64,000 bases of DNA, taken from contig NEEC01000021.1 in the NCBI GenBank assembly GCA_002189035.1, positions 1-64,000 on the forward strand. The letters run 5' to 3'. The stretch is from Utricularia gibba (lineage: Eukaryota; Plantae; Magnoliophyta). A model generated the notes under the pieces. The model searched no databases and had not been told where the DNA came from. It worked only from the letters and a program-made list of their open reading frames with translations. The position numbers were made by a program, and so were the translations under genes. Below are positions 4,045 through 28,925 of the stretch, piece by piece (position 1 is the first letter of the stretch; the number at the start of each line of letters is the position of its first letter).

Positions 4045-4046
4045 AA

Positions 4047-4680: not shown

Positions 4681-4689
4681 CCTTCTTTT

Positions 4690-7829: not shown

Positions 7830-8268
7830 TGTTGGAGGTCAGCCTCAATCTAAAGATTGAAGGTGATTGGAAACATTAATCTTGTATCATAATGTCATGT
7901 TTCAGATAAAAAGAAGTTGGGTTCGAGCACGGAAGTGTTGGGTTCGAGTTGTTGGGCTTTTTGTGTGTTTTCAATAATTTTGGCCCACTATTGGGTAACC
8001 CAGGTATTGGATAAATATAAACTTTACTAGAAATGCGTGTCAATATGGTTTTCTGTCATTCTTATTGTTCATGAGTTTTTCATCCAAGGTGATCTCATAA
8101 GCATTACACTTTTGTTCCTTCCAAAAACGCTATCTTTCTTGTTTCAACATGGTATCATGGCAGTAAGGTTCTCAAAACTCTGTTTGTTTCAGTATATTAT
8201 TTACCGTACAACGTTTTTTACTTAGTGGATTACCAAATATCAACCAAAAACTTGTCAAACAGTGGCTA

Positions 8269-8484
8269 TGATGGCATCTGGTAGAGGACCTCCAATATTT
8301 GATGGTTCTGAGTATGGGCGGGGTCAAAAAGATGCGTAGCTACCTTCGTTCAGAAAGATTTGGGATGTTGTAGAAAGGGAGATTTCGGCTATTACAATAG
8401 CAAGCAAATCCACATCAAAACAGCAAGAGGAAGCTGAGTATCTTCAACAGAGAAAAGATGAAGCAATGAATGCCTTGTATCATG
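8269..8484 (+). pseudogene. gag: Copia gag N-terminus
   Basis: MMASGRGPPIFDGSEY..VKKMRSYLRSE..WDVVE (frameshifted), interrupted at 8485. Confidence 0.75.
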
Positions 8485-9678
8485 TGATATGACCCTCCAA
8501 TCAACAAGTGATTGGCAAACCAGATCTTGGCTGAAAAGAAGCAATCCTTCAAGAAAAAGAAGTTGGCCCTCAAGGATTGAAAGATTATTGCAACCCAAAC
8601 TATGAAATGGTACCACACTCACAGAATCAAGGAAGGAACTGGGAGTGATAAACCACACACTAGACACCACAAACAAGGCTTGATAACTCTAAGTTCTACA
8701 AGAACTCAAAGAAGGAGAATTTGCTCTCAAAAGTTATTACAATTCAAGTTGTCCAAAACATGAGTAAGGCCTTCTTTTATAGATGAACGATTGGGACTTA
8801 TTACAGGAAAAGTAGTAATAATAATGTATTTGGAAATAATAGGTCTTCTCTAATCAAGTTGATGCACTTTGAGAATGTTGAATTCCATGCCAAACACCTC
8901 ATAGCTTGGTTGATTGGCCCATAAGCTCTTAAGCGCTTCCTGATTCCTTCTTGCTCTTAATCTAATGATTGGCCCAACTGAAATCAATGTTAGATTATTG
9001 ATCTTGTAAACCTTATCTTCATTGTGATAATCTACAGCATCCATGATCTCATCATCCCCCTTCCTTTAGCAGATTCATCCTTGAATCATCACCATCTACA
9101 TCACAAGGAACTAAGTCAGCAATATTGAACGTGGAGTGCACCGAAAACTCACCTGGAAGATCAATCTTATAAGCATTTTCATTGATTTTCTCAATGACTT
9201 AAAAGGATCCATCTCCTTTGGGTGAAAGCTTTGAATGTCTCTTGCTTGGAAATCTTTCCTTTCGAAAATGTACCCAAACCCAATCTCCTGGTTGTAGAGT
9301 AACTTTCTTCCTATGTTTATTAGCTTTAGCTGCATACTCCCTGTTTTTGGCTTCCAATTGATTTCGAACCTTCTCATGCAGTGTTCTGATGGCATCAAAA
9401 CTACGAAATTCATCAGATGGCAAGGGCAACAAGTCTATAGGAGCACGAGGATTAAAACCATACACAATTTCAAAAGGAGAACAATGAGTAGAAGAATGTA
9501 CTGCTCTATTGTATGCTAAACCCAACTTACTCCAAAGTGTACGCCAAAAGTGGCTAAGAAACTTTGTGTCACGATCACTTACAATGGTAAATGGCATACC
9601 ATGAAGCCGAACAATCTCCATGAAGAATAAATCGGCAACAAGCGAAGCATCATCAGTCTTGTGACATGGAATGAAAGC
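8485..9678 (-). mobile_element. CRM-type gypsy 3' fragment (integrase end, PPT, 3' LTR 8485-9054) nested in the copia gag
   Basis: Integrase [47 protein letters not shown] precedes the LTR TGATGAG..GGTCATATCA, and a GPIIRLRARR CR-like motif lies inside the LTR. Confidence 0.88.
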
Positions 9679-9719
9679 TCCATCAGCTGTATTCTGAATA
9701 TCCTGTTACACCAGAGCCA

Positions 9720-12700
9720 ACATTTAGGGAGTTCATGATTGAGTTGCAATCTATACAAAAGAGATTGGAACTAAGAGGTGGTTATGAAGTTGAGAAAGCT
9801 TATGGTGAAGCTGCTCTCCTTACAAAAATGCAGAATATGAATATAAACTCAGGTGCAATTAACAATGTCAAGGATGTCAAGTCAACAGCCATCAAACATT
9901 CACCAACGTCATTCCCAACATCAACGATGGGTAATAAGAAGTGCAGGCATTGTGATAAATCCACCACAAGAGTGAATATTGTTGAACTTTCAGCACAAAT
10001 GCTTGCAAGCATTGCAATAAACAGAATCACAGGAGTGAGTTTTGTTGGTGGAAGCCTGATGCTTTGTGCACGAAATGCAATCAAATAGGTCATCTTGACA
10101 AGGTATGTGGAATGTCAAATCCAATCAAAATTGAGCATAACAAGAAGCCTACTTCCAAAGATGAGAAATCACATGCATCCTTTACCTACTTTGAAGATGA
10201 GCCAGAAATAACTTTTGAAAATCCTTTTGAGTATGAGTGTGCTTTAATGACAGTAGCCTCAGATGCTAAAGGCTGGTACTTGGACTCTGGCACCTCCTAT
10301 CATGTATGTTGTGATACTAGAATTGAAAGATATCAAGTTTGCCGATGCCATATGTGAAGTGTGCCATCAAGGTAAACAGTGTAGAAAGCCCTTTTATTCC
10401 AGTGATTCAATAGCAAAGGAGAAATTAGAGCTTGTGCATACAGATGTTTGTGGACCATTTAAGGAATGTTCATTGGGGGAGAGTAGATATTTTGTTACAT
10501 TTATTGATGATTAATCACGTTATTGTTGGGTTTACTTTATTAAAAGCAAGTCAGAAGCTCCTCATATCTTTCAAAAATTCAAAGTGATGATTGAGAATCA
10601 GAGTGGATGCTCCTTAAAGATAATTAGGTCAAACAATGGAGGGGAATTCTATAATAATAGCATGAGAATGTTTTGTGAAAATGAGGGAATCATGCATCAA
10701 TTCACCGTACCATATTCTCCACAACAGAATGGTATATGTGAAAGGAGAAACAGAACAATCCTTGATATGTCAAGATGCCTATTGTTTGAGAAAGATCTTC
10801 CTGTAAATTTTTGGGCTGAAGCGGTATCTACATATGTATATCTATTGAACTTGATTCCCTCAAGGGCGATTAGTGGAAAAACTGCACATGAAAAATGGCA
10901 TGGTTATATTAAAAAGGTTGATCATCTCAGAATCTTTGGTAGTCTGTGTTTTATTCATGTAACAGACCAAAAACGAGAAAAACTTGATAAGAAATCTGTA
11001 TCTTGTGTATTTGTTGGTTATAGCAACACTACTAAGGGATATAAAGTTTATCTACCTCAACAGAAGAAATTTATCTTCAACCATGATGTCACTTTTGATA
11101 AAGGTGCAAGATATACTTTAATTGATGATTGCATTTTTCTGAATGATGCAAAAGCTCATAAAAGTCGTGGAAGGCATAGCACCCATGTGAAAAGAGACCT
11201 CTAGACACACATGCCTCAAAACTTCTCTTCGAGGAATTCAACAAACCAAGAAACTTCAGAACTCGTTCATGAAGATTCAAATCAAGTAAATGATCAGCAT
11301 TCAGATGAGAATTTTCTAGCTCTAGAGGAGGAGAAGGTCACAAATCAAGATGACTTGTCCAATGAGAATTCAGAATCAAACTCTGAACCCCTATATGGAC
11401 AATCTCATCAGGCCAATGTTTGCATTCAGATGGGAATTTCGAAATCCAGAAGAGGAGCAAGGCACGAATGCAGAAGACTCATCAACAGATGAATCTGATG
11501 AAGAGGAACCTGATACTGATGATGAAGATTATTACCCATCTGATCGTGATTGGCAAAGGAGGAAACGCAAAAACATAAGAGATTCAATAGATAATGAAGA
11601 TAGTCATGTTACGGACATTAGAAGAAGCAAAAGAAACAAGGCTCCTACAATAAGTTTCTCCAAGTTGAATGATGATGTCCAAGATGCTGTAGCTGATATT
11701 TTGGCTGGATTATTGACAGGAGATCCAACATCATTTGAAGTAGCTGTACAAAATCCGAAATGGAGAGAGACCATGAAGGAAGAAATGAATTCTATACTTG
11801 AAAATGAAACATGGGAGTTAGTGGATAAACCCAAGGATAGGGGTTTCAAACCTATTGACCTCAAGTGGTTATTCAAAACCAAGATGAATGCAGATGGTTC
11901 TATCAACAAATATAAGGCTAGATTAGTAGCCAAGGGATATAGTCAGATCAAAGGAATAAATTTTCATGAGATTTTTGCACTGGTAGCAAGATTTGACACG
12001 ATTAAAGTACTTCTTGCCATTTCAACTGCTCATAGATGGAAAGTGCATCACATGGATGTCAAGACTGCATTCTTGAATGGTGTGTTGGAGGAGGTTGTTT
12101 TTGTTGAACAACCAAAGGGCTTCGAAGTGTCAGGTCATGAAGACAAGGTATTGAAGTAAAGAAATCTCTCTATCGGTTGAAGCAAGCTCCTAGAGCATGG
12201 AATGAACGCATGGATAACTTTCTCCAGGGTATTGGTTTGAGAAAAACATGTAGTGATTACTCATTTTACGTTAAAGGAAAGGGAGATGATCGTTTATTTG
12301 TTAGCGTATATGTGGATGATCTTATGATTAGTTCAGGTGATGAAAGGAAGATTGAAGAATTCAAAGCCCTTCTCAAAAATGAATTCAAGATGACTGACCT
12401 TGGAATGATGTCCTACTATCTAGGCATGGAAATTCATCAACTTGCAGGTGTTAGAACATTCATATCTCAGAAGAAGTATTGTAATGAACTTCTTGAAAGG
12501 TTTGGGTTCAAAGATGTCAATCCTACAAAAACCCCTTTGGATTACAAACAGGTGATTGGTGAGAACAATCAGAGAAGGAATGTGGATTCTACTACTTATA
12601 GAAGTATGATTGGAAGCCTCATTTATCTCCAGCATACAAGGTTTGACCTGTGTTTTTGTGTAAATATCTCATCTCGCTTCCTCAATAAACCAACAACAAC

Positions 12701-13300
12701 TCACATGGCAGCTGTGAAAAGAGCTTTCAGGTAAATAAAATCTACTACTGATTTCGAATTGTTCTATCCTTATGAAGGTGAAAAACCAGTCTTGAAACTT
12801 AGAGCCTACTCAGATAGTGATTATGGTATGGCTGAAGATAGCAAGAGTACATCAGGTGCACTCTTCTTCTTAAACAAGGCCCCTATAGTCTGGTTTTCGA
12901 AAAAACAAAAAGTGGTAGCACAATCAACAGTTGAAGCAGAATACATCTCAGCAGCACAGGCTTCGAACTATTGTGTTTGGTTGAGGCAGATGCTAAACGA
13001 ACTTGGATTCATACAAAAGGAAGCTACACATCTGCTTATGGATAATCGAGCTGTAATCTCCATTGCCAAGGATCCGACGAACTTCAGCAAAGCCAAACAC
13101 ATAAGAATCAGGTATCATGTCATAAGGAATTACATCAAGGAAAAGAAGATTAAAGTGCAGTATGTTGAGAGTGGGAATCAGCTTGCTGATGGGCTCACCA
13201 AAGGTTTGAACAGAGTTCAGTTTGAGCTAGCAAGGAAGAACATGAATCTCATGACTATGGAAGACTTTCTCAAGTTGGGAGATCTCGGTCTGGGGGGGAG
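9720..13300 (+). pseudogene. pol: Copia gag C-terminus, protease (truncated), integrase, RT and RNase H, with stops and frameshifts
   Basis: Zn knuckles (CRHC, CTKCNQIGHLDKVC), WYLDSG, HTDVCGP, PQQNGICER, YKARLVAKG, HMDVKTAFLNG, YVDDL, YSDSD, STVEAEY, KHIRIRYH. Confidence 0.93.
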
Positions 13301-15198
13301 TGTTGGAGATCAGCCTCAATCCAAAGCTTGAAGGTGATTGAAAGCACTAATCTTGTGTCATAATGTTATATTTCAGATAAAAAGGTGTTGAGTTCGAGCA
13401 TGGAAGTGTTGGATTCGAGTTGTTGGGCTTTTTGTGTGTTTTCAACGATTGTGGCCCACTGTTGGGTAACCTAGGTATTGGGTATATATAAACCCTACTA
13501 GCAATGCGTGTCAATAGGGTTTTTGGTCATTCTTATTGTTCATGAGTCGTTTTTCATCCAAGGTGATCTCATAAGCATTACTTTTTTGTTACTTCCCAAG
13601 ACTCTATTTTTCTTGCAACAACAATTGCAACTTGGAAAACAATTCAGGGAAAGGCTTCACAGGTACTGAATTAGGTGTATCAATTTTTAACAGCAACTCT
13701 GTTCATTTGCACTCCCATTGTTATGACTTTCATCATGTTCATCCGATTGAAAGAATCTGAATCATTTGCTTGCATTTAGACATCAATGAACACATTACTT
13801 TCCCTTAAACTCTTCAAAATCTTCCGGTGGTTTTATGTAGCTGCCTGGGAGTTTTGTTCGGTTTACTTTTCACTATGAAAAGTGGTGCATAACATTGCAA
13901 ACAAAAGAATAAACTTTGCATTACTATGTAAATCGAAGGTGGCAAACACTCCTTAAGAAGTGTGAAATCCAAATCTTTCTTCATGAAGAACAAGCACATC
14001 AATTTGTGGTGTAAAATATACATTTGAGCTACAACGGTCTAAAGCAGACACTTTCCCAATTCAATATGGAAAATGATATGAATGGGCTTTTCATTGTTTA
14101 TGTAAATGACAAAGCAAGTAAATACTTTTTACCCCCACTGTTTGGATATTAAAGAAATGTTATCTCTAATCAAGTCTATTTATTAATGGGCAAATTTGAT
14201 CCCTACTATTCAATGAAAAGTGTGTTGTTAGTTCCTATTCTTTTATAATTGATCCTTATTGTTTGTCGTCTCAAAATGTTTGATCTCCATCATTTATCAT
14301 ATCATATATGATTAGCCCTCAACATTTTTGCATAAAGGATTTTTCTTCTGAAGTGTTTGAATATAGTACATAATTAATCATCATTGTTTGAAAATGTTTG
14401 CTATTTCATTATTTCAAATAATGAAATATAGTCTTCAAATCAAAATGGGATAATGCATTCCCACTACTTACTTTAATTTGCATGGTTTAAATAAATGATA
14501 TATTTAGTCTGCTACAATTTGAATGGCACATTTAGTCTTCATTGTTTATAATAATGCTATATTTGATCCTCTTTGTTTTCAATGTGCCAATTTAATATTA
14601 TTTAATTGGTAATTAGATAAAAATAATATAGAAAGCCCTAAAGATCACAATTCACAAATGCATACATGCAGTACTTGTGCCTTTTATTTCAAAACTAATA
14701 ACCGCAAGCATCATTCAATTCCAAAAGACAATTGAACTATGAGAAGAAAAACAATCAAAAGCATGTGAAACTAAGACAACGGTGAAGGAACAGGAACTCG
14801 AGGGAATTTGATAAATAAGTGGACCACACCCCTATAAATATCTTATTTTTTCCTTTCAAAATGCAACATTTACACCCCTACAATTTCCCATGCCAATTTT
14901 CTTCTTATAACTTGGTGTTACGGAGAAGGATATGTGGTCTTTAATCCCTGCCGCGTTCCACTCTCTCCGATAAGGATGAACAGAGGAGCAACACTCCCTG
15001 ACAAGGTGTATTTTGAGGAGGGCCTATCTAATAAGGGGTGGTAGGGACAACCAAGAAATGACTCACTATTTGGTAACCTAAAATGGTTACTTACGGCTGT
15101 TGTAGATCAGATATGCTTGGAGCGGTATTAGAATATCATTCCCCTACGAGCTGTGCTATAAGTGATTTTTTGATTAAGAAAAGTTATTTAAAGAATAT

Positions 15199-16362
15199 TG
15201 ATAAGTGATTTTGTGTCACTTATATTTGTACTTTTTAGGACTCACTTAAATGAGTTTTGCATTCTTTTTATCCCACTTTCTTTATGTTTTTTGAAGAATT
15301 TTATATCTTTCATACCACTTTGATCTTTTTGGAGGCAAAGTGTGTTTTGTGATTTTTCATGACGAATTTGGAATTATTTGGAGGATTTTCGAGTTGACCT
15401 TGATGGACGCAAAGATTTGGTCTATCCAGACGAAGACTCGGTCAAAGATTCTTGGATAAGATAAGATTCACATCTTATCTTAGAAAATTTGGATCTTATC
15501 CTAGAAGATTTGTATAAAATCTTAGAAGATTCAGATAGAAGATTTGATGAGAGTCCATCAAGAAAGCCCGACAAATCCCCACCATTATATAAAGATCCAA
15601 ACGTGAAGACCTAGAAGAAGAGTCAAGTGTGGGCGACCAGAGAGTCAATCTAGGGTTTAGAGTCGAGTCTAGAGTTAAGCATGCGCGTGTTTAGAGTTAA
15701 GCATGCGCGTGTGAGCGCTTGCGACTGAGGATCTGCTGTGAAGCCTTGCTTGCGCAAGTTCTACGCGTGTGACTGTCTTACCATGTTTTTCAGCATTTAA
15801 TTTGAGGCATGATTCTATTTTTCGCAACGTTTTCTTTACCAACGTGATCTTTAGTACTATATAGCCCTAAGGGAGTGAAGGAGAATCAAAGGTCGGCCTC
15901 AAACACCTAAGTAGAAGGGCTCAATCGAACATCGTTGGTAAGGCACATTCTGTTTAATCTGTCTGCGAGGTGAGAGGTGTAGGGGTTAGATTTGGGTGTG
16001 GGGAAAACATGGGTTATCACAAGAGGTGAAATGGCTCTGGTGGCGTGGTTGATTCCATAATCCCACAAAATAAGGGGCGGTGCTATAACGGTCACCGAAT
16101 AGGACTATTTTAGCATAACACCCCCAAAGCTTGCGCAAACAGGTTAGTTCTCAAGGTTTGCACACACGCAGGGGCGATTTTCAAGTAAGGTGGATCTTAG
16201 ATCCAAGGCCACTTTTCTTATTATCTTCAAAATCAAATCTTTCTTTTGTTTTCGATCTTTTTGAATCTTTGTTTGAAAAGAATATTCCAATAACAATTCC
16301 CTGTGGATACGATCTTATTTTATTACTTTGACGGTTTCTGTGCACTTACAGAATTACCATCA
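15199..16362 (+). repeat. Athila 5' LTR (1164 bp)
   Basis: TG...CA. About 95-96% identical to the 3' LTR over the shared ~770 bp (manual count). Confidence 0.95.
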
Positions 16363-16368
16363 AGTTTT

Positions 16369-16385
16369 TGGCGCCGTTGCCGGGA
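16369..16385 (+). promoter_or_regulatory. Primer binding site complementary to the tRNA-Asp 3' end
   Basis: TGGCGCCGTTGCCGGGA, the PBS typical of Athila elements. Confidence 0.9.
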
Positions 16386-16504
16386 TTGTATTCCTTTGGA
16401 ATTTCTTTTCTGATTTCTTTTTTGATCATTTCTTATTTTTCTGTTCTTTTCAAGACATTTTGTTTAGCGCACTTGCGCAAGCAGTTGCTTTTAATCAGTG
16501 TTGC

Positions 16505-18780
16505 ATGCGCAGGCATAGGGCTTCAACCGAGCTGTACCCGCTGGACCTAGAAATTTACCAGACCTATCGGAGAATTAGGTTGGAAAGTCGTCAAGCGCAA
16601 GCGCAACGCAAGGAAACCATGTCTAGAAGGCATTCTGGACATTAGGAGGACTATCTGGTGATGTCCGAACCAGATAGCGAACGAGCACGGACGCCAAGAC
16701 ACCAGCCAAACAGTTATAGGCAGATCTGCTGCTAATCGTGCAGGGTTATATCGGAGGCGTAGCGATGGATCTGATCAAGAACCTTCACCGGAACGAACAA
16801 CAGCAAGATTGGGACCAAATCAAGGTGTGGAACCTCTCTGAGAAGGGCCCATAGGCGCATTATCAGATCCAGGAAGAACCAACAAGGCGCTTGAACGTGG
16901 TCTAGGAAGGCCTAGGCACGCAGATGCAAATGAAAACCATTTGCAATCGACGTTTGCACAAGGATGGCAGGAAAACAGAGCTTTTGAATCTCAACATCAT
17001 GCCGATCAGAACAGCAACCCACGAACTCCAAGGCGAGGAGTGAACTCTCCTCCAAGGTGGGAAGGAGAAGACTGTTGAGGTCACAATGGAGCAAACCGAC
17101 GAGACAACCAAAATCCTCGTCACGAGCAGAGGTATGAATTTGTAGGAAATCCTGAAAGGGAAAATCATGGAAGACAACGGTATATGCCCAGGAGGAATGT
17201 GCGTGCTAAAGAAGCATCTAGCGATGAGGACGGACCAGAACCAGCATGCAGGGAATCACCTGCGCAAGTGAGGAACCATCACACAGGAAGAGACGGGTAT
17301 GTGTGCAGGTAGCAGGCTGCTAATAGATTTGCTGTTGATCCTTGGGATGAAGTCCCTTTAGGTGATAACTTTCGACACACGAGGAAGCTTGGACCCATTG
17401 CTGCACCGGCCATTAACGTGCGGAGATTCCAACTCCAGCTTTCATTGATCACCATGGTGCAACAAAGCCCATTTCGTGGAGAACCCGGTGAGGATCCCGA
17501 AGAACACATTGCAATTTTTCTCAGGTATTGTGATATGGTGGTGGAACGAGTAGTCTCTGACGACTTGATCAGGTTACGTTTATTTCCATTTTCGTTATGG
17601 GGGTCAGCAAGGCGATGGTTAGACTCTTTAACACCCAACTCTATTTATACTTGGGAAGAATTGGAGGATGCATTTTTGGACAAATATTTTGAACCCACAA
17701 AGTACTCTAACACCCGGTTTGAGATCACTAATTTTTCACAGGATGAAGGAGAAGGAATAGCAGCAGCTTGGGAGAGATTTAAGGAAATTACACGAGTCAC
17801 GGATAAGCATGGACTCAGCCCCGCTGCTATGATCATGTGCTTTCATGATGGACTGACTACGCAAGCAAAGGGACTGCTGAATGCGGGTGTTGGACCCCTG
17901 GACCAAATAAGTCCTAGAAGGGTTTGGGAACTAATTGATGAGTTTGCAAAACGACAGGCATGATGGACTCAACCAGCAAGGAATTCGAAAACTGGAGTTC
18001 GGGACAACCCTCGTGACAATACTGTTTCAAAGATTTCCGAAACATTGCAAAAATTAGATGATAAAATCAGCAAACTCTAGCCTGTCGTTGCTCAAGTCCA
18101 AGCAGCCTCAGAAAAGACAGAGAGTGAGGCAGAAGAGGAAGGTACGAATGTTAATTTTGTGAGTTTTCAGGGAAAACTTGCACAAGGAGCTTCTATGCCT
18201 GCGCAAGGGAACAACTGGGGAAATCGAGGCAACACTTGGCAGAACCAGAATCAGAACCAGCAGCAGCCTCAACGACCATTCTTACGGGATACACTCAATC
18301 AATTCATGGAGAAACAGGAAGGGCTGAACCAAGGAATGCTGGAACAAATCAAACAAGTAAATGGATTGGTGGTTGAACAACTTAAGCAAATAAGAGGAGA
18401 AATTTCAGACTAAAAGACAAGGGTGAATGAAATAAATGAGCGTCTGGAGCAACTCGGGATAACAACTCGCATCCTGGACAGTAGGATGAGTAATGTCGCT
18501 CAAACCCACAAGGCTTCGAGGCTCCCAAGTCAACCAGAGAAGAATCCTGCTGAATGTAAGACTATAGCAACGAGAAGTGGGATGCAGAGTGCAACAGCAA
18601 CAGCCCCTGCGCAAGCAAACGAATTGCTGGATGTTCCAGTGTATGTATCTCCACCTTCTTATAATCCTCCAATCTCTTATCCACAGAGAGAGGTCAAATC
18701 ATCAGTGGATCAACAATATTCCAAGTTTCTGGAGATGCTAAAAACTCTTCATGTGAACATCCCATCCCATTCACTGATGT
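16505..18780 (+). pseudogene. gag: Athila gag (long N-terminal region plus Retrotrans_gag core), disrupted
   Basis: MRRHRASTELYPLDLEIYQTYRRIR start; FQLQLSLITMVQQSPFRG..LRLFPFSLWGSARRWL..WEELEDAFLDKYF core. Confidence 0.85.
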
Positions 18781-21700
18781 GACGTTGCAAATGCCCACTT
18801 ATGCGAAATTCTTGAAGGATATTCTGGCCAATCGAAGGAAGATTGAGAATGATGCTATTATTGAATTATCCAAGCAATGCAGCACGATTCTTACACAGGG
18901 GCTGATTCAAAAGCATGTAGATCCTGGAATTTTTTCAGTCCCTTGTATAGTTAGAAGAAGCAATTTTGAGAAGTGCTTATATGATCTTGGGTCAAGTATC
19001 AGCTTGATGCCTTATTCTTTATTCAAAGCACTGAATCTTGAGGAGCTGAGAAACACGAAAATTCAGATGGTATTTGCTGATAAATCCATGAAGAATCCTG
19101 AAGAAGTGGTAGAAAACGTACCGGTAAAAATTGGAAAATACTTTGTTCCTTGTGATTTTGTTGTTTTGGATATGGCACTTGATGTGGAGGTTCCAATTAT
19201 TTTCAGGAGACCATTTATGGCAATCACAAGAGCCTAAATTGATGTTAGAGCAGAGAAATTGACACTTAGATTCGGAGAAAAGGAACTGGAGTTCAATGTT
19301 GATCAAGCAATGAAGTGATTTGACTACAATGAGCTTGTGCAAGGGGAAGCGGAAGATGCTGTTACGCAGGAGCATGCGCAAGCAGTTTTTCTGCGCGAAA
19401 TTCAGGAAGTAAATCTTCTGCAGGATGAAAAAGAAGACACTCCCAGATGACACACCAATGATGGCTCGGCTAACAAAGAAGGAACTTGATGCTGGAGGAA
19501 AAATTGAAGAAGCTACCACCATCACTAAGGTACGAATTTCTTGAGGATGATCACACTTACCCCGTGATTGTTAACGCGGGATTGAATGAATACCACATCC
19601 AAATACTGCTGGATGTCTTGTGCAAACATAGACAAGCCATTGGGTACACCTTGGATGACTTGAAAGGGCTTGACCCTCAATTCTGCCCCCATCGGATTTA
19701 TTTGGAACCTGAGGCAAGACCAATTGTGCAACCACAAAGGCGGGCGAATCCTATGCTGAAGGAAGTGATTAAAAACGAAATTTTGAAATTGTTAGATGCT
19801 GATATCATCTACTCTATTTCAGATAGCCAATGGGTTAGCCAGCCCAGTACACTGCGTACCAAAGAAAGGAGGCATGACAGTGACACAAAATGAGAAGGGA
19901 GACCTCATCCCTTGCGCAAGGTCACTGGCTGGAGGATGTGCATTGATTTTCGGAAACTCAATTATGCCACTAGAAAGGATCATTATCCATTACCATTTAT
20001 TGATCAAATTCTGGAAAGGTTAAGTAACCAAGCTTTCTATTGTTACCTTGATGGTTATTCCAGATATTTCAGATTCCAATTCATCCGGAAGATCAACACA
20101 AGACATTTGGTACCTTTGTATACAAGAGAATGTCATTCAGTTTATGCAATGCTCCTGGAACTTTTCAACGTTGCATGACAGCCATTTTTTCAGAACATGT
20201 GAAGAAGATCATGGAGGTATTTATGGATGATATATCTGTTTATGGAACTGATTTCGATTCATGTTTGCAAAAGTTGGGCATCATTTTGAAGAGGTGTATT
20301 GATTACAACTTGGTACTCAATTGGGAGAAATGTCATTTTATGGTTGAAGAAGGCAATGTGCTTGGACATCACATTTCTTCCAAAGGCATTCATGTGGATC
20401 CAACAAAAATTGAGGTGATTGAAAAATTACCAGCACCAACTACGGTAAAACAGATCAGAAGCTTCTTGGGGCATGCAGGATTTTATAGGAGATTTATTGC
20501 TAATTTTTCTCACATTTCTCGCCCACTAACAGCACTACTTGCACAAGACACGGATTTTTGTTTTGATGCAGAATGTGTGCAAGCATTCAACACGCTGAAG
20601 CAAGCTCTTATCACTGCACCCATTCTTCAACCACCAGATTGGACCTTGCCATTTGAATTGATGTGTGATGCAAATGATTGTGCTGTAGGGGCTATTCTTG
20701 GACAGAAAAAAAGACAAGGTAAATTATGTGATTTATTATGCTAGCAAAACTCTCAATGCAGCCCAAAGGAACTATACAACCACAGAAAAAGAGTTGTTGG
20801 CCATTGTTTTTGTCATTGAAAAATTCAGATCCTATTTGTTGGGTGCAAAGGTAATTGTTCATACGGATCACGTTGCCTTGAAATATCTTTTGAGCAAGCA
20901 GGAATCGAAACCCAGATTGATAAGATGGATACTGCTCCTCCAAAAATTTGATCTGGAAATTCGTGACAAGAAGGGCAAGGAAAATGGAATGGCTGATCAT
21001 TTGTCATGCCTACAGCTTGTGGGGGAGCTGTCCATTGATGATTCTTTCCCCACAGAACGTATCCTTGCTGTCCAAGATGGCAATCTGCCATGGTATGCTG
21101 ATTTTGTCAATTATCTCGTTGGAGGAGTCTTGCCCCAAAATCTGAATTTCAACCAGCGGAAGCGCTTCCTTGCGCAAGCGAAGCATTATTTCTGGGAAGA
21201 ACCTATGCTTTTCAAACGTTATGCTGATGGAATTATCAGAAGATGCCTACCACCAGAGGAGGTAAGGGACGTTATTTGGCACTACCATTCATCACCATAT
21301 GGAGGGCATGTAGCAGCATCAAAAACAATTTTCAAAATTCTTCAATCTGGATTTTATTGGCCCACCATGAATCATGATGTGAGGGCATTTGTTCAAGCAT
21401 GCAAACCATGTCAGCATGCGGGTTCTATTTCTAGGAGAGATGAAGGACCCATGACATATATCATGAAGGTGCAAATTTTTGATGTTTGAGGGCTGGATTT
21501 TATGGGACTCTTTCCATCTTCTTATGGCAACACTCAAATTCTTGTGGCAGTGGATTATGTCTCAAAATGGGCAGAAGCTATTGCAGTTCCAGCAGCTGAT
21601 GGAAGAGCTGTAATTAAGCTCTTCAAACAGATCATTCTACCCAGGTTTGGAGCCCCAAGATACGCCATAAGTGATGGAGGAAAACAATTCATTGAAAGAG

Positions 21701-23685
21701 AATTCCGGAAGCTCTTGCACAAGTATGGAGTGGGACACAAGGTATCAACTCCATATCACACACAAACCTGCAGACAAGTGGAGGTAACTAACAGGGAATT
21801 GAAGAGGATTCTGGAGCGTACGGTGGCCAAAACCCGCAAGGATTGGGCAACCAAAATAACTGATGCTTTAAGGGCTTATCGCACAACGTATAAGACTCCC
21901 TTAGGGACCTCCCCTTATCGTTTGGTTTATGGGAAAGTGATGACGCACATTTTTCCTGAAATTCATAATGCAAAATAGTTATATTTTATTATGGTTTAGG
22001 TTAGATAAATGTGGTTTTTCATGCTTTAGTGGTGTTTATGTTAATCCTATGTGATTATGTTGAAAAGTGGATTAAATCCTTTGATTTAGTCAACAACTCT
22101 TATTACTGATGTTTCAGTAAGTTCAGCAGGGAAATGAGCCGAAAATCAGACTGGCAAGCGTGTAAAAGAAGCAAAGAAGGGCGCAAAATCCGGGAAGGAC
22201 AAAGAGCATTGTTCTGCTGCCACCGCAGTCTGCAAGTTCAGGCCAGGAGCAGTACTGGCGGTCAGGAACAGTACTGACAGTCAGAAACAGTGCAATGGAG
22301 TGAAGCAAATGAAAAGGAAATTAATTCAAAAGAAGGCGAACGCGAAAAGAACACACAACGAGGGGGACGCAAAGGGGTCTTCTTCCCCAATGGGAGAAAC
22401 ACCAACCAGAGGGGGGAAGGGAGGCCTTCATCACCAAGAATAGCACCGGAGCCCAGTTCAGCGCTACTGTTCCTGGCTGTGAACAGTAGCTAACGGGCGG
22501 AAGAACAATCCTTATTTACTTTCTGTTTTCTGAACATTTCAAGTTTCTGCGTTTTACTTGTTTACAATGTTTCTACCATCTTAGGGATGCCTTAAGGTGA
22601 AGTGGTGTGGTGTGTGCTTAGGTTTCATGATGAAATTTATGTGTATTCCTTAACTCTTGTTTCTAACAAACCATGGGTAGACCTAAGGAGGGAAGCAAGT
22701 AGTTTCACAACTTAGATGCTTGGTTTAGAGGTAGACCAACAAACCAAGACGGGAGCAGTCGGTGTTAGTTCAGGGTAGAATCAGTAGAACCGGGTAGACC
22801 TAGTTCTATATGCCTTGCATGCGGGTAGACCTAATTGCAATGTGGGTTATGACATTGGGGACTAGCTTAAGCCAAAAATATGATGAATGACCTGGGTAGA
22901 CTTAGGTTATTTGAAGTTGTAAGTGTAGGAAGATAATAAATTGAGTTAGGAAGCTTAGTATAACACCACCCGCAGACCCTTAAGGCGTCCTCGTATTAAT
23001 CTGAGTCAAAACCAGTACCTATTACCCTAGCGTAGAAACCTGATATTACTTACCTACCTTGTTTACTGAACTTGCTTACCACTATTAGTTCGAGCTTAGA
23101 CTAAGACCTACTGTTATCCGAAATTATGCATGTACTAAAACACTTAGCAAGCACAAGCTCTTCATGATCGACCCCGATATCCACTATATAAGTTTTCCAA
23201 ATTTGTATTTTGTGTAGATTAGGGATTATAAATTTATTTGATATGGATTTTCTATTTTTATTTGCAACGATATTAGGAAAATTCCCGTTTATCAGAAAGC
23301 TTGTCACTTGCCTGTGGAATTAGAGCACAAGGCATATTAGGCTATCAAAGAATTAAATTTGGTTGCCAAGGCTGCTGGAGAGCAAAGGATCTTGCAACTC
23401 CAAGAGCTGGACGAGCTAACGATAAGTGCCTATGAAAATGCAACGCTGTACAAGGAACAAATGAAGGCTTGGCATGACAGTCACTTGCGCAAGAAGGACC
23501 TAGCAGAAGGTGACCCAGTTTTGTTATTTAATTCTCGTTTTCGTTTATTTCCAAGAAAGCTCAAGTCCAGGCGCCATACACCATCAAGAAAATCTACCCT
23601 AGTGGAGCAGTCCTCCATCACTCATCCTAACCATGGAGAATTCACGGTAAATATTCATAGATTGAAAGTTTTCATGAAGGGGTAA
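18779..23685 (+). pseudogene. pol: Athila protease, RT, RNase H and integrase, disrupted and split by a solo LTR
   Basis: [76 protein letters not shown]|ACHLPVELEH. Confidence 0.93.
21938..23294 (+). mobile_element. Gypsy solo LTR (1357 bp) inserted in the Athila integrase
   Basis: TGATGA...TTTATCA with perfect TSD GAAAG (21933-21937, 23295-23299). Removing it restores VYGKACHLP. Confidence 0.93.
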
Positions 23686-25214
23686 AATTTTTCATGGACA
23701 CATTGCATGTTCCAGTGGACCTCTCTCACCATCCCCCACCTTGATGAGAAAGCACCTATGGTTTACTTGTTGCCATTACAAAAACAAATGATTTCCCTTT
23801 TAGTTATTTTATTTTCGATTTTCTCTTGCATTTTTTTTTTTTTTCTTCTTTCTCTTCAATAAGCACAGATGCAATGGATATTTTGAGGAAAAATTCCACA
23901 CTATTAGATACATCAGAGCACCTGACGAAAGGTAAGTGTTTCTGCCCATCTTTAGGACAAGATGTCATTTAAGTGTGGGGGGAATAGTTTACTTTTTAGA
24001 TTGTTTTTCATACCTTTAAAAAAAAATTCGAAATTTGGCATATATTTCATTAATCAACTTCTTGCATTTTATGTTTTGCTTGAACCTAGGCATCTGTTTT
24101 TGGTATTATTTTTTCAAGATAGTTGCTGTAAATTAGAATTTTGGTATGCCTGTTGCTATGTTGTTTCTTGGCATGCTGTTACTTTCTGTCTCTTGCGCAA
24201 GCTACATAGCCCTAGTTTCTTGGTGAGAAGACCATTTTCTTTTCATTATGAGTGACTTGAATGCAGAATGATCATAGACTTGTTCTTGTGCATACTGCTG
24301 AGTTATTTTGCAGGTCCTGTGCAAAAGGATTGAGGCACTAGGATTTGCCTTGTTTTATCCCAATATCCCACCTTGAATCCACTTAGTGAGCCCCACTTGG
24401 CCTGAAACCTTTTATTTGGATCACCACATTAGAAACCAAATCCGTTTTGACAATTATAGCCTACATCAATTTCTCTTGACCCAAGGAATGAGCATTTGGA
24501 AAATAGGTTTGTTCGTTTGCTTGCGCAAGTTGCAGAACCAGGAGCTCTATTGCAAAGAAGAAGAGTTGAGAGCGATTTTCAATTCACTGATCAAGCTCTA
24601 ACTCAGGAATTTATGAAAGGATTTTCAATAACATCCTGTCTGAGAGAGAGTTGATTTTGAGGTCAAAAAAAAAAAAAAGAAGGAAAAAAAGAGAAAAAGA
24701 GAAGAAAAAGATGAGAAGAAGAGAGAAAAAAGGCTGAAAGGTTGGAACAAGCCACAAAACTGAAAGAGAAGGAGTTTTTTGGAGCACAAAAATTAGAGGA
24801 CAAGCATGGCAGAATTTTTTGATGGATGCTCACTCTTTATTACCCATGAAATGGAGCCTCCAGCTGAATTTCCCACCTGTCCCAAGCTCCTGCCATGCTA
24901 CAACCCGTGAAAAAGATCTCATGATTGTGCAAGCTTGCTGAAACCAGTGGATCACTTGTGCAAGTTTACTGACTCGCCTACATTCAGGTATTGAGTGAAC
25001 CTTTTCATTTTACCCTCCTCTTATGGATTTTTCTTCTTGAGCATATTGAGTGACACCTGTGAGGAGTAGCCACGTGCAAGGGGAGCTAGTTTATGGTATG
25101 CCATTGAATAACTTATGCATATTGTTGCCTTAACTCTATTTGCAAGCTACTATTTTGAAAGAAAATGCCTTGAACAATAGCTTGAGGACAAGCAAACATT
25201 TAAGTGTGGGGAGT

Positions 25215-26041
25215 TGATAACTGATTTTGTGTCACTTATATAAAGATCCAAACGCGAAGACCTAGAAGGAGAGTCAAGGGTGGACGACCAAAGAATCAAT
25301 CTAGGGTTTAGAGTCGAGTCTAGTATGTTTTGGATTCCTTTCTTTTCGTTTTTCATCAACTTTTTTTGTTTAGAGTTAAGCATGTGCGTGTGAGCGCTTG
25401 TGGTTGAGGATCTGCTGTGAAGCCTTGCTTGCGCAAGTTCTGCGCGTGTGACTGACTTACCATATTTTTCAGCATTTAATTTGAGTCATGATTCTATTTT
25501 TCGCAACGTTTTCTTTACCAACGTGATCTTTAGTACCATATAGCCCTAAGGGAGTGAAGGAGAATCAAAGATTGGCCTCAAACACCTAAGTAGAAGGGCT
25601 CAATCGGACATCGTTGGTAAGGCACATTCTGTTTAATCTATCTGCGAGGTGAGAGGTGTAGGGGTTAGATTTGGGTGTGGGGAAAACATGGGTTATCACA
25701 AGAGGTGAAATGGCTCTGGTGGCGTGGTTGATTCCATAATCCCACAAAATAAGGGGCGGTGCTATAACGGTCACCGAGTAGCACTATTTTAGCATAACAC
25801 CCCCAAAGCTTGCGCAAGCAGGTTAGTTCTCAAGGTTTGCACACACGCAGGGGCGATTTTCAAGTAAGGTGGTTCTTAGATCCAATGTCACTTTTCTTAT
25901 TGTCTTCAAAACCAAATCTTTCTTTTGTTTTTGATCTTTTTGAATCTTTATTTGAAAAGAATATTCCAATAGCAATTCCCTGTAGATACGATCTTATTTT
26001 ATTACTTCGACGGTTTCTGTGCACTTGCAGAATTACCATCA
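25215..26041 (+). repeat. Athila 3' LTR (827 bp, with a 365-bp internal deletion relative to the 5' LTR)
   Basis: Preceded by PPT TTAAGTGTGGGGAGT. The junction CACTTATAT|AAAGATCC joins 5'-LTR positions 15225 and 15591. Confidence 0.93.
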
Positions 26042-26450
26042 AATATAGCGAAAAAGAATTAAGTCATGCTCATATTGACAAGCATAAAATCAAGGAAAAC
26101 AAAGAAAACAAAGATTGGATGTTTTTTAATGTATTTACTAATAAAATTATACATTTTAAATATGATTTTATATATGTTTTGAATTTACATTATTATTATT
26201 ATTATAATAAAATTGATTAAGTCATCGATTTAACAATGTTTTGTTTTGATATCCTATTTAGTGAGTTTCGTAGCAAGTTTTTTTTTTTATCAAACCACCA
26301 CCAATTCTATATATAAAATAGGTGGCATCCAATACAAGGTAAGGGAAACTTTTGTTGCAAAATGTAGTAACAGCCGAAAAAAAAAAATATGAAAGAAAAC
26401 ATATATGACAAGAACATGGAGAAAAAAGAATATATTCTACAGGGGGTGAT

Positions 26451-26925
26451 GGCATATTTGACCTAAAACTTTGTATTTTTGGTATTTTTGACCCATAGCA
26501 AAATGACCGATTTGGCATGTTTGACTCGAACTGTGACCGATTTGGCTTATATGATTCAAAATTTTTACAAAATGGCATATTTGACTTATAAAAAATTTAG
26601 TACATGATATATTTAACCCATAAAAATTTAGTTTTAATACTTTTGATCTATAAAGTTTCATAACATGGCGTATTTGATCCAAAAAAAAATTAATAAAACT
26701 TTACAATGGTATTCATTTGATCCAATCAATTTGTTGTTGGTCTCATCTACAGTGTTCAACTAGAATATTTAACCAAGAATTTGGCATATTTGACCTTTAT
26801 ATTTTAACAAATTGGCATTCTTAACCCTTGAAATTTATTAAATGTGTATATTTAACCCACATAATTTAAAAAATTGGTATAATTAATCCAACAAGTTTAT
26901 TAAATTAGTATAATTAACCCATAAA
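26451..26925 (+). repeat. Degenerate ~31-bp tandem array (GGCATATTTGACC core), probably one arm of a long MULE/foldback-type TIR
   Basis: Cores at about 26451, 26481, 26514, 26544, 26574, 26606, 26636, 26667 ... 26907. Partly repeated at 62880-62930 and 63700-63830. Confidence 0.6.
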
Positions 26926-28925
26926 ATTTAACATACTTTTTAAAAAATCGAATCATCTTCAATAGAAATGTTGGTCGATAAGGGTCATGTACATTGACCA
27001 ATTTTTATGAGTCCCATCGCTTGGCCTTTGACTAATTCAAAAGTCGTTTACATAACTTGATACGTCATCTGCACCTAGCACCTCTTGGAGGAACAAATGA
27101 AGTGGACTCTGTAGATAAATAAATTTATCCTCACCTTGGGTACATTCTCATTGGTAGGAAAAAATCACATTATTCACCTAATATAAAGTAAATATGAGTT
27201 ACCAAAAAAATAATATTTTACTTAACAAATACAACTATTCAAATGGCATATCGGGTTCAAAATTGATTTATATGTCAAGTCACCTATTAACAATGTGTTG
27301 AATGAATCATGCTGACCTTCATATGAACCCTAAAATATGATAAGAACGAACAAGTTAGGCTTGGTGGCCCTAACTTCTTATTCAATTTGCCTTAGCTAAC
27401 GATCTCAACAAAAATAACCACGATTTTAACTAAGATAAATTGCTATTGGAATATTCAAAAATAACCACGATTTTACTTCTTATTCAATAACGTTTTTTAT
27501 AAATAATTTATCTCTGAACTTATGAAATTAAATACTTAATCTCCTATGTTATCAAAACTAACTGATTTTAACTCTTAATGTCACATTGTTATTAAGAGTA
27601 TCTACAATTTGTATTCTTCCTTGTATGATAATCTTACTCTCGCTAAACTCTGAAAATTACGATATGTGAATGCGATATAATCCTAATAAGATATTTTGAT
27701 TTCTTCTTGTTTTTATGATATGAAAATCACAAATTTTTAATTATGTTTAGTTGTTTATTTTATAGTTTTAAAATAAAAGTACTTATATTAATCCATATTT
27801 TTAATTTATCATTAAAGGGGAGGCTGAAATTTAATTATTATAATTTTTAGTCTAGTTGACTTCCAATTTATTCTTTTTTTTTATTAAGGGGGGGGGGGGG
27901 GGCATGCTGTGTATAACTAAGAACCGCCCCTGCGTCTAAGTGCAAGGGTGCATCTTTCTTTCTCTTTCTATAAAATCTGGGAAAAAGACTACTAATGATA
28001 CCCCTATTTGAGTACAATTGCAACGCCATCCTCATGCAACTTAATACATATTTCGTGAAAGGAGTAATATAAATAATCATACTCCTGGATTGTCTTGTTT
28101 ACTTCATTTGCATATATAGCTGAGTTTTTAGCAGCTTCCCTCTTGACCTTTTATGTTTGCTTGGCATTACTTTTCTTTTGCATGTTTTTGTTGTTCCTTT
28201 GCAGTCCTCTCAATCTTAGAATCTAATGGGAGAAGAGCTCCAGGTCTAAAGGAATGCAAACGCCTTTACTACAACACTTAAAAAGTACATAGCTCCATAG
28301 CAATGACACTATTTGGTAAAAGAAAAATTTTTGAATTGTCACGAGTCAAAAAATCTCTCCATCAAAATATTTATATATCAAACATACAACTTACAAATAT
28401 TTTAGAAATAAATATTATAGTAGTATGTCCAAATCAATTCACAAAGAACAATGGGATTTTAGTTCTAAGTTATATGTGTATGCTAAACCAAATAAAGATA
28501 TCAACAAGATGCTTAACGAAGCAATGTGTAAATAGATTACTTCACATACTAACTATGAAAGCAGTAAAAATACGAAAAAACTAGGGCTTTGACTAAATAT
28601 ATATGCTAATCCATAAACATTAAACATTGTTACAGTCTACTAGCAGTCATCAAAGTCATTGAAAAACTTGTAAAAACATGTCAATCTAGCACATCCTGAA
28701 ATAAATGCAATTTTTCCCGAAAGGAGTAAAATGTGTCGCAACAAAACAAACAGCATTCAACTTAAAACAAAAAAAAATGTGTTGAGTTGCTAGTTAAATA
28801 AAATAAAAAAATCAGTAAATGTCTAGTTTCTTATTCTTCTTCTCTCTAGCCAGATCTGCTACAAAAGCTCCTATTTAACAATGTCCAAGTTTTCCTCCTC
28901 TTTCCTCTATCGAGAACACTATGGT

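What the first reader, a model, noticed from the sequence alone, without database searches (positions are those of the whole stretch)
15199..26041. Palindrome CTTGCGCAAG spread through the whole Athila element, including coding sequence
Perfect copies start at 15749, 16472, 19911, 21169, 23484, 24192, 24520, 25428 and 25809. CpG-deamination products occur as CTTGCACAAG (18177, 20538, 21714) and CTTGTGCAAG (19334, 24955). Other one-mismatch copies start at 16130, 17259, 18198, 18606 and 19373. That is about 19 sites in ~9.5 kb, against a chance expectation of about 0.005 for the exact 10-mer at ~40% GC. I saw no perfect copy elsewhere in the window or in the nested solo LTR. The motif lies in different codon phases (LAQA, HLRKK, PLRKV where TRTV is the usual RT residue string as I recall), so it looks selected at the DNA/RNA level. 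This fits a family-specific cis-code: binding sites for an element- or host-encoded protein, analogous to the VANC target motifs of VANDAL MULEs, or RNA dimerisation/packaging palindromes. From memory, other plant gypsy families have their own palindromic motifs, so the phenomenon may be general, but its function is not established to my knowledge.
Basis: partly seen in the sequence, partly recalled or inferred. Interest (0 to 1): 0.8.

Follow-up and report, generated by a model that had tools for sequence, protein, structure and literature searches.

The report
Evenly spaced palindrome code in ATHILA
A decayed plant ATHILA-type retrotransposon carries one 10-base palindrome at 19 evenly spaced places, even inside its genes, and relatives in other plants each carry their own palindrome, which points to a little-known family-specific recognition signal whose reader is still unidentified.

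Summary
CTTGCGCAAG occurs 9 times exactly and 19 times with at most one mismatch. All copies lie inside one LTR retrotransposon (15199-26041); the other 53 kb has none. Base composition, amino-acid content and codon usage do not explain this.

New findings:
- The 17 site clusters are far more evenly spaced (gaps 328-918 bp) than random placement allows.
- Only the complete zero-spacer palindrome is enriched, not isolated half-sites.
- The element has the ATHILA-lineage junction and primer-binding site, but its species is unknown.
- Five of the eight whole or near-whole relatives fetched from other plants carry their own CpG-containing palindrome (four with the ATHILA-type junction). It is either scattered, or clustered in the LTR and just after pol.

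The clustered layout matches the palindromic "RM boxes" described for Sirevirus (copia) elements. I found no description of this for ATHILA.

Two tests for sense-RNA self-pairing gave no support (wobble tolerance, matched half-sites); a third, predicted accessibility, was biased. Half-sites vary independently, as expected for a dimeric DNA-binding reader. That is my best explanation (confidence about 0.4). An RNA-level role is not excluded. I rate it a new variant of a known kind.

The parts
15194..15198 (.). Target-site duplication AATAT, left copy
   Evidence: Read directly; same 5 bases at 26042-26046.
15199..16362 (+). 5' LTR (1164 bp, starts TG, ends CA)
   Evidence: 96% identical to the 3' LTR over 676 bp. 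Holds motif sites 15749 and 16130. It carries about 360 bp near its start that the 3' LTR lacks.
16369..16381 (+). Primer-binding site of ATHILA type, 6 bases (AGTTTT) after the LTR end
   Evidence: exact match to the 13-base PBS that the ATHILAfinder preprint gives as the lineage seed.
17397..23682 (+). gag-pol (gag, protease, reverse transcriptase, RNase H, integrase), broken
Evidence: Pfam hits; outer bounds of similarity to relatives' proteins. Breaks counted: at least 6 in-frame stops, at least 5 frame changes, 2 stretches that do not align, and 1 nested insertion of 1357 bp.
25202..25213 (+). Purine-rich tract just upstream of the 3' LTR (polypurine tract)
   Evidence: Read.
25215..26041 (+). 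3' LTR (827 bp)
   Evidence: Holds motif sites 25428 and 25809.
26042..26046 (.). Target-site duplication AATAT, right copy
15749..15758 (.). Motif, exact; 5' LTR
16130..16139 (.). Motif, 1 mismatch (last base); 5' LTR. Its twin in the 3' LTR is exact.
16472..16481 (.). Motif, exact; leader, about 100 bases after the primer-binding site
17259..17268 (.). Motif, 1 mismatch (CCTGCGCAAG); upstream of the gag similarity
18177..18186 (.). Motif with central CpG read as CpA; gag-protease linker, phase 0
18198..18207 (.). Motif, 1 mismatch; 21 bp after the previous site, phase 0
18606..18615 (.). Motif, 1 mismatch; gag-protease linker, phase 0
19334..19343 (.). Motif with central CpG read as TpG; pol
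19373..19382 (.). Motif, 1 mismatch (CATGCGCAAG); pol
19911..19920 (.). Motif, exact; reverse transcriptase, phase 2. Overlies a residue string that is conserved in relatives.
20538..20547 (.). Motif with central CpG read as CpA; RT/RNase H
21169..21178 (.). Motif, exact; between RNase H and the integrase zinc domain, phase 0
21714..21723 (.). Motif with central CpG read as CpA; integrase core, phase 2
23484..23493 (.). Motif, exact; integrase C-terminal part, phase 2
24192..24201 (.). Motif, exact; region after pol
24520..24529 (.). Motif, exact; region after pol
24955..24964 (.). Motif with central CpG read as TpG; region after pol
25428..25437 (.). Motif, exact; 3' LTR (twin of 15749)
25809..25818 (.). 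Motif, exact; 3' LTR (twin of 16130)

Best explanation
The 10-mer is this family's version of a dyad-symmetric recognition site that recurs across the ATHILA lineage and, in copia elements, across Sireviruses.

I propose that it is read on double-stranded DNA by a factor that binds as a symmetric dimer, one subunit per half-site (R-CTTGC on each strand). The factor could be host- or element-encoded.

In some families the sites sit in two clusters: one in the upper part of the LTR, and one between pol and the extra ORF. Those are the places expected for a promoter or enhancer and for an internal promoter. In this family the sites are spread along the whole element, about one per 500 bp. That suggests the bound factor acts locally and must cover the whole body, for example to keep the element's chromatin open or to oppose silencing, as well as to activate transcription.

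Every motif carries a central CpG, so binding would be sensitive to cytosine methylation.

Shown here: the enrichment, the symmetry, the spacing, the family specificity, the independence of the half-sites, and neutral decay after insertion.
For: - Enrichment is confined to the element and is not explained by composition or codon use.
- Only the full inverted arrangement with no spacer is enriched. Isolated half-sites, everted, direct and spaced arrangements are not.
- One and the same sequence is used at all sites, which calls for a common reader. General palindrome density is not raised.
- Half-sites and flanks vary independently of each other. Perfect dyads are no more frequent than independent assortment predicts in the three scattered families.
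- In the Microthlaspi family all 27 exact sites have a purine before and a pyrimidine after the core, with no base-pair covariation. The window shows the same trend: 14 of 19 and 13 of 19.
- All six family motifs contain CpG.
- In L003, L007 and L011 the motif sits in the first third of the LTR and just after pol, with recurrent 20-21 and 30-34 bp spacings. This is the layout of the Sirevirus RM boxes, which their authors read as cis-regulatory.
- Even spacing in the window: CV 0.31, and 0 of 20000 random placements are as even.
- Sub-elements in L005 that are only about 74% identical in RNase H share the same 10-mer but at different places. So the motif identity is maintained while sites turn over.
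Against: - No reader has been identified.
- The window's element shows no extra ORF after pol, only about 1.5 kb without ORFs.
- The extra-ORF protein of a relative is a Pfam family of unknown function with no solved relative.
- Binding sites inside coding sequence, at a cost to conserved residues, are unusual for transcription-factor sites.
- Even spacing is significant only in the window's family, not in L001 or L005.
- The short-distance periodicity comes mostly from tandem arrays, whose units are not independent.
- Three ATHILA-type relatives (L002, L004, L010) and the Zingiber locus L009, where no ATHILA-type junction was found, show no such motif.
- The tests that disfavour RNA pairing have low power, and one is biased.
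Confidence: 0.4

Rival explanations
1. RNA-level self-recognition. The palindrome makes the genomic RNA self-complementary at many evenly spaced points. Copies of the same family then pair with each other (dimerisation, selective co-packaging, alignment of the two templates) or within one RNA (compaction). This would be a many-site version of the retroviral dimer initiation site.
For: - Perfect self-complementarity, a G+C-rich centre and family specificity all fit, and no protein would need to co-evolve.
- One exact copy lies in the leader about 100 bases after the primer-binding site, in the window and in the minus-strand L005 element.
- Even spacing along the whole transcript suits tethering or compaction.
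- Five of six gag regions sampled lack a CX2CX4HX4C zinc knuckle, so RNA selection may work in an unusual way.
- From established knowledge (not tested here): HIV-1 subtype-specific 6-base palindromes govern co-packaging, and Ty1 RNA uses palindromic PAL sequences.
Against: - Imperfect sites do not favour changes that keep G-U pairing on the sense strand: 35 G-U-type against 54 C-A-type mirrored mismatches, the same direction in all five families.
- Halves do not covary.
- The commonest L001 variant is not self-complementary.
- In-register pairing would not need the same sequence at every site, yet other palindromes are not enriched.
- The leader is not unusually structured (z = 0.31), and the site is predicted in a stem, not a loop.
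- Predicted local accessibility of the sites is below that of GC-matched windows. This test is biased by the palindrome's own small hairpin.
Confidence: 0.22
2. Hairpin and small-RNA link, as proposed for maize Sirevirus palindromes. Neighbouring palindromes fold into stem-loops that feed small-RNA production, so the motif mainly marks the element for, or is shaped by, host silencing.
For: - Closely spaced pairs exist (21 and 39 bp in the window; nine pairs at 21-45 bp in L005; arrays in L003, L007 and L011) and could form 10-14 bp stems.
- In the leader fold, the exact site pairs with a degenerate copy 32 bases downstream.
- Sirevirus palindrome regions are small-RNA hot spots that can form hairpins.
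Against: - In the window most sites are single and about 500 bp apart. A 10-bp stem closing a 500-base loop is a poor Dicer substrate (inference).
- A feature that only helps the host would not be maintained with the same sequence across diverged sub-elements, nor imposed on conserved protein residues.
Confidence: 0.08
3. A mutational by-product without function: a replication or reverse-transcription quirk (template switching, templated patches, biased repair) keeps writing the same short palindrome into the element.
For: - Sites are not positionally conserved between families, or even between sub-elements sharing the motif.
- Several sites in relatives fall where the reference protein has a gap.
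- After insertion the motif decays like its surroundings.
Against: - Flanks of the 19 sites share nothing beyond a weak purine/pyrimidine preference, so no larger unit was copied.
- No known process writes one specific 10-mer at regular 330-920 bp intervals.
- Different families would each need a different written sequence.
- Neutral decay after insertion is what a cis-signal used only during the element's own cycle would also show.
Confidence: 0.07
4. Chance, base composition or codon usage.
For: None.
Against: Dinucleotide shuffles, order-2 Markov simulations and synonymous-codon shuffles never reach the observed counts.
Confidence: 0

Closest known systems
Palindromic repeated motifs ('RM boxes') of Sirevirus Ty1/copia elements (Bousios et al. 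2010, PMC2829016; Bousios et al. 2016, PMC4728375)
   Same: Family-specific dyad-symmetric motifs of 10-20 bases with a CpG-rich core and 8-32 copies per element, with a repeat step of about 20 bases. They cluster in the upper half of the LTR and just upstream of the extra (env-like) ORF. I see exactly this layout in relatives L003, L007 and L011. The L011 motif even has the CGG-N-CCG core.
   Different: Those are copia elements, and the authors called the feature Sirevirus-specific. Their motifs stay in non-coding regions. In the window the motif lacks the CGG-CCG core, is spread through gag-pol as well, and is evenly spaced rather than clustered.
VANC target motifs of VANDAL21/VANDAL6 Mutator-like elements of Arabidopsis
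   Same: A short motif specific to one transposon family and repeated many times within it. It differs between related families and is thought to co-evolve with a sequence-specific reader that counteracts silencing.
   Different: Here no reader is known, and no VANC-like gene is seen.
Retroviral dimer initiation sites and Ty1 PAL sequences (established knowledge, not tested here)
   Same: Short G+C-rich palindromes whose lineage-specific variants decide which RNAs pair.
   Different: Those are one or a few sites in the 5' leader, shown in a hairpin loop and 6 bases long. Here there are 19 sites along the whole element, 10 bases long, not predicted in loops, and with no wobble tolerance.
[quoted passage not shown]
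   Same: Family-specific repeats between pol and the 3' LTR, in the same superclade, with a proposed regulatory protein encoded nearby.
   Different: Those papers do not describe the repeats as palindromic or as reaching into coding sequence. The window's element has no recognisable extra ORF.

Membership tests
ATHILA lineage of Ty3/gypsy LTR retrotransposons | Domain order gag-protease-RT-RNase H-integrase | tested here: met
   Pfam hits in that order on the + strand; tblastn to relatives' polyproteins.
ATHILA lineage of Ty3/gypsy LTR retrotransposons | 5' junction: LTR terminus, short AT-rich spacer, then the 13-base PBS for tRNA-Asn/Asp (seed used by ATHILAfinder) | tested here: met
   ..CATCA, then AGTTTT, then an exact PBS at 16369. 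Definition taken from the preprint read. The same junction occurs in L001-L005 and L007.
ATHILA lineage of Ty3/gypsy LTR retrotransposons | 5-bp target-site duplication and TG..CA ends | tested here: met
   AATAT on both sides.
ATHILA lineage of Ty3/gypsy LTR retrotransposons | No second (archaeal-type) RNase H, which marks the sister clade Tat (PMC6317226) | tested here: inconclusive
   No such Pfam hit in the ORFs scanned, but pol is broken and was only scanned in pieces.
ATHILA lineage of Ty3/gypsy LTR retrotransposons | Placement within the Athila clade in an RT/RH/INT phylogeny (REXdb) | not testable with these tools
   No reference domain set was at hand. The best protein hits are only 46-63% identical.
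ATHILA lineage of Ty3/gypsy LTR retrotransposons | Extra ORF with the ATHILA ORF-1 domain (PF03078; present in only 16% of Athila elements, so not required) | tested here: not met
   No hit in the window's ORFs. The domain is present in a neighbour element of L005.
Sirevirus-type palindromic RM boxes | Dyad-symmetric motif, at least 8 copies per element, sequence specific to the family | tested here: met
   19 copies; other families carry other palindromes.
Sirevirus-type palindromic RM boxes | CGG-CCG core signature | tested here: not met
   The window's core is TTGCGCAA. Only L011 has the CGG-N-CCG core.
Sirevirus-type palindromic RM boxes | Confined to the upper half of the LTR and the linker upstream of the env-like ORF | tested here: not met
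   In the window, at least 7 sites map inside gag-pol and the spacing is even. The feature is met in relatives L003, L007 and L011.
Sirevirus-type palindromic RM boxes | Host element is a Ty1/copia Sirevirus | tested here: not met
   The element is Ty3/gypsy.
VANC-type anti-silencing system | Element encodes the sequence-specific reader | tested here: not met
   No ORF or domain beyond gag-pol is recognisable in the window's element.
   This needs binding and methylation maps from the source species.
Retroviral-type dimer initiation site | Palindrome exposed in the loop of a leader hairpin | tested here: not met
   The leader copy at 16472 is predicted inside a stem, and the leader fold is no better than shuffles. 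Sites are less accessible than controls (a biased test).

The most novel reading that the evidence does not exclude
ATHILA elements, and convergently Sireviruses (the two plant LTR lineages known for env-like extra ORFs), carry a fast-evolving, family-specific palindromic 'address'. A dedicated dimeric reader uses it to mark the whole element body at regular intervals. This would be a self-recognition or anti-silencing system of a kind so far shown only for VANDAL DNA transposons. In some families it is strong enough to override conserved reverse-transcriptase residues.
Probability: 0.3. Interest if true: 0.85.

Novelty: new variant of a known kind. Interest (0 to 1): 0.7.

Why it matters
ATHILA elements are among the main colonisers of plant pericentromeres and centromeres, yet how they are recognised by themselves or by the host is poorly understood. 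A short, family-specific, methylation-sensitive palindrome laid down about every 500 bp would be a concrete handle on that question.

- It could be used to sort families.
- It could be used to look for the protein or RNA partner in existing binding, methylation and small-RNA maps.
- It could be used to ask why two unrelated plant retrotransposon lineages arrived at the same device.
- It shows that selection on a nucleic-acid signal can compete with protein conservation inside pol.

Tried and rejected
- **Other copies of this family.** The word-indexed protein search gave only 46-63% identity. The representative search with gag gave at most 54%, from Genlisea, Centaurea, Hibiscus and Tanacetum. 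Exact look-ups of eleven window ORFs found nothing. The species is therefore unknown, and I could not compare copies within the family.
- **Full-text searches.** I searched the 10-mer, its 8-mer core, the relatives' motifs, and 'Athila' with 'palindrome' or 'palindromic'. These returned only primers or unrelated papers.
- **Positional homology of sites between families.** Rejected: sites map to different protein positions.
- **A general excess of palindromes.** Rejected.
- **Isolated half-sites or other arrangements.** Not enriched.
- **Base-pair covariation of flanks or halves.** Absent.
- **Wobble tolerance on sense RNA.** Absent.
- **RNA accessibility.** Sites look less open than controls, but the test is biased because a palindrome can fold on itself.
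- **LTR-pair divergence.** Motif positions differ at 4.2% against 3.4% elsewhere; CpG loss is 5 of 37 against 30 of 183. This shows only neutral decay after insertion. It does not test selection during the element's active life.
- **A reader among extra-ORF proteins.** The relative's ORF is Pfam PF20167, function unknown, with no significant solved relative.

Full report
**Observation.** CTTGCGCAAG occurs 9 times exactly and 19 times with at most one mismatch. Dinucleotide-preserving shuffles of the window give 0.02 and 0.75. Every copy lies between 15199 and 26041. The half-motifs TGCGCAAG (13 copies) and CTTGCGCA (10) are likewise confined to that interval. It is the top 10-mer of the element by a wide margin: 7 copies in one LTR plus the internal region, against at most 3 for any 10-mer in order-2 Markov simulations. 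The copia, Harbinger and Mutator-like parts of the window show nothing similar.

**Anatomy.**
- The interval is one LTR retrotransposon with TG at 15199, CA at 26041 and a 5-bp target duplication AATAT.
- The 5' LTR is 15199-16362 and the 3' LTR is 25215-26041. My notebook entries use bounds one base off; these are the corrected values.
- The LTRs are 96% identical over 676 bp.
- A primer-binding site lies at 16369-16381, six bases after the LTR.
- Pfam places gag, protease, RT, RNase H and integrase in that order.
- gag-pol (17397-23682) is broken. It has at least 6 in-frame stops, at least 5 frame changes, 2 unalignable stretches, and one nested 1357-bp insertion with TG..CA ends and its own 5-bp duplication.
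- About 1.5 kb without recognisable ORFs follows pol.

**Is it Athila?** The junction (LTR end, AT-rich spacer, 13-base PBS for tRNA-Asn/Asp) is the seed that the ATHILAfinder preprint defines for the lineage. The window matches it exactly. So the lineage call is supported.

The species is not established:
- The best RNase H-integrase hits are 46-63% identical.
- The best gag representatives are at most 54% identical and come from Genlisea, Centaurea, Hibiscus and Tanacetum.
- None of eleven window ORFs is on record.

**Selection at the nucleic-acid level.** I shuffled synonymous codons within each of the six in-frame segments, handled apart. This gives 0.018 exact and 0.47 near copies, against 2 and 6 observed. 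None of 2000 shuffles reaches either count.
- Mapped coding sites use two phases: phase 0 four times and phase 2 three times.
- At the exact copy in RT, the window departs at 2 of 4 residues from a string that 7 of the 9 aligned copies from relatives keep, fully or nearly. Other coding sites sit in poorly conserved stretches.
- Only the complete inverted arrangement with no spacer is enriched. Once full sites are subtracted, isolated half-sites are at expectation. Everted, direct and spaced arrangements are absent or at chance.
- A purine tends to precede the motif (14 of 19) and a pyrimidine to follow it (13 of 19).
- Five sites carry TpG or CpA in place of the central CpG. This is what methylation-driven decay of a silent copy produces.

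**Even spacing (new).** I merged the two tight pairs (21 and 39 bp) and subtracted the foreign insertion from the coordinates. The 17 loci are then separated by 328-918 bp (median 509, CV 0.31). None of 20000 random placements is as even. With the 3' LTR left out, 1 of 20000 is. No internal repeat explains this, and the flanks of the sites are unrelated.

**Relatives.** I fetched eleven loci that encode the closest available RNase H-integrase or gag proteins. None holds the window's motif.

Scattered palindromes:
- L001 (Hibiscus trionum): CTGYCRCGACAG-like, 17 sites, all in the element.
- L005 (Microthlaspi erraticum): CTCGATCGAG, 31 sites over three element pieces, including a neighbour that carries the ATHILA ORF-1 domain.

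Clustered palindromes, in the first third of the LTR and in the stretch just after pol:
- L003 (an ENA chromosome assembly): ACGTCGCGACGT.
- L007 (Sinapis alba): GGATCGATCGATCC.
- L011 (Smallanthus sonchifolius): TAGCGGACCGCTA.
- In L003 the second cluster lies upstream of the extra ORF.

Other points:
- L002, L004, L009 and L010 show no such motif. L006 and L008 are only fragments.
- Apart from L006 and L008 (fragments), L009 and L011, all loci have the ATHILA-type junction (L010).
- All six motifs contain CpG.
- Related hosts share cores: GTCGCGAC in L001 and L003, and (GATC)n-derived cores in the two Brassicaceae.
- Sites do not map to homologous protein positions between families. They do not even do so between L005 sub-elements that share the motif while being about 74% identical in RNase H.
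- So the motif identity is maintained while individual sites turn over.

**What is known.** The closest published case is the palindromic 'RM boxes' of Sireviruses. These are family-specific dyad-symmetric motifs with 8-32 copies and a CpG-rich core. They cluster in the upper LTR and upstream of the env-like ORF, and were described as Sirevirus-specific and probably cis-regulatory. Later work linked them to small-RNA hot spots, hairpins and 19-22-base indels. The ATHILAfinder preprint, the lineage survey and the Retand study do not mention palindromes in ATHILA. Neither does any hit of five full-text searches. The library covers open-access papers and preprints only, so an earlier description elsewhere cannot be excluded.

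**DNA or RNA?**

Against sense-RNA self-pairing:
- Mirrored mismatches that would keep G-U pairing number 35, against 54 of the C-A type. The direction is the same in all five families.
- The two halves of a site, and its flanks, assort independently.
- The commonest L001 variant is not self-complementary.
- Other palindromes are not enriched, although in-register pairing would accept any.
- The leader copy is predicted in a stem of an unremarkable fold.
- Sites are predicted to be less open than GC-matched windows. That test is biased by the palindrome's own small hairpin.

For a dimeric DNA reader:
- The same sequence is used everywhere.
- Half-site preferences are independent: in L005 all 27 exact sites have a purine before and a pyrimidine after the core, with no covariation.
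- CpG is present in every motif.
- The clusters in three relatives sit in promoter-like positions.
- Short distances peak at 20-21 and 30-34 bp, though these come mostly from tandem arrays.

The window's element has no extra ORF. A relative's extra-ORF protein belongs to a Pfam family of unknown function with no solved relative. Five of six gag regions lack a CX2CX4HX4C knuckle, which keeps an unusual RNA-handling route open.

**After insertion.** Across six LTR or LTR-like pairs, motif positions differ at 4.2% against 3.4% elsewhere (p = 0.44). Motif CpGs are lost at 5 of 37 against 30 of 183 (p = 0.81). So the host does not conserve the motif in inserted copies. Whatever it does serves the element during its own cycle.

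**Verdict.** The finding is a real, strongly non-random feature. It belongs to a kind known from Sireviruses but apparently not described for ATHILA. Two aspects are new: spread through coding sequence, and even spacing. My best explanation is a family-specific dyad site read on DNA by a dimeric factor that acts along the whole element (confidence about 0.4). An RNA-level self-recognition role is the main rival (about 0.2).

- The printout showed a stop symbol inside two four-residue strings of relative L003, at reference-protein coordinates. I noticed it afterwards, masked such symbols in the later residue printout, and do not repeat those places here.
- Searches printed bounds and end motifs that bracket the nested insertion. 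They are not repeated in this report either.

Noticed in passing
window, inside the integrase gene, between motif sites 21714 and 23484 (exact bounds withheld under the operators' rule): A nested 1357-bp insertion with TG..CA ends and a 5-bp duplication GAAAG, most likely a solo LTR of another family. It holds three copies of the 11-mer GGGTAGACCTA (at 22675, 22792 and 22823) and no copy of the palindrome.
   Followed up: partly
window 15199-16362 versus 25215-26041: The two LTRs differ in length (1164 against 827 bp). About 360 bp near the start of the 5' LTR, bracketed by a short TTATAT repeat, is missing from the 3' LTR. The 5' LTR has a 22-bp tandem duplication at 15670-15712, where the 3' LTR has an unrelated stretch of about 45 bp. 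A TATA-like box at about 15587 would put all motif copies downstream of the transcription start.
   Followed up: partly
window 13625-14968 plus 26126-27097, versus 60814-64000: The ATHILA element sits inside a long repeat whose twin lies at the right end of the window (92% identity). This is probably the LTR of a much larger outer element spanning most of the window.
   Followed up: no
window 2061-3352 versus 10315-13623; ORFs 1730-13331: Copia-type pieces (gag-pre-integrase, integrase, RVT_2) with repeated segments 94% identical. This is a rearranged or nested copia element, and it has no enriched palindrome.
   Followed up: partly
window 53742-54758 versus 56784-55765: A 1-kb inverted repeat (80% identity) a few kb downstream of Mutator-like ORFs (49501-51562: MuDR DNA-binding domain, SWIM finger). 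Possibly long terminal inverted repeats.
   Followed up: no
window 40344-40675: A 117-bp tandem repeat (2.8 copies, 86% matches) next to a PIF/Harbinger-type transposase fragment (40990-41451, minus strand).
   Followed up: no
gag regions of the window element, L001, L003, L004, L005, L007: No CX2CX4HX4C zinc knuckle in any + frame of gag-pol, including the intact 1144-residue polyprotein of L004. Only L002 has one.
   Followed up: partly
imperfect motif sites of the window, L001, L003, L005, L007: On the sense strand, mirrored mismatches of the C-A type outnumber the G-T type 54 to 35 (p = 0.056), in the same direction in all five families. This could reflect a G-to-A / T-to-C mutation bias on the plus strand, or pairing on the complementary strand. 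Unexplained.
   Followed up: partly
L011 5561-5672, 12087-12724, 16291-16402: A Smallanthus element in which no ATHILA-type primer-binding site was found carries a 13-base palindrome with the CGG-N-CCG core typical of Sirevirus RM boxes, in the same two positions. The device may therefore extend beyond ATHILA within the Ogre/Tat/Athila superclade.
   Followed up: partly
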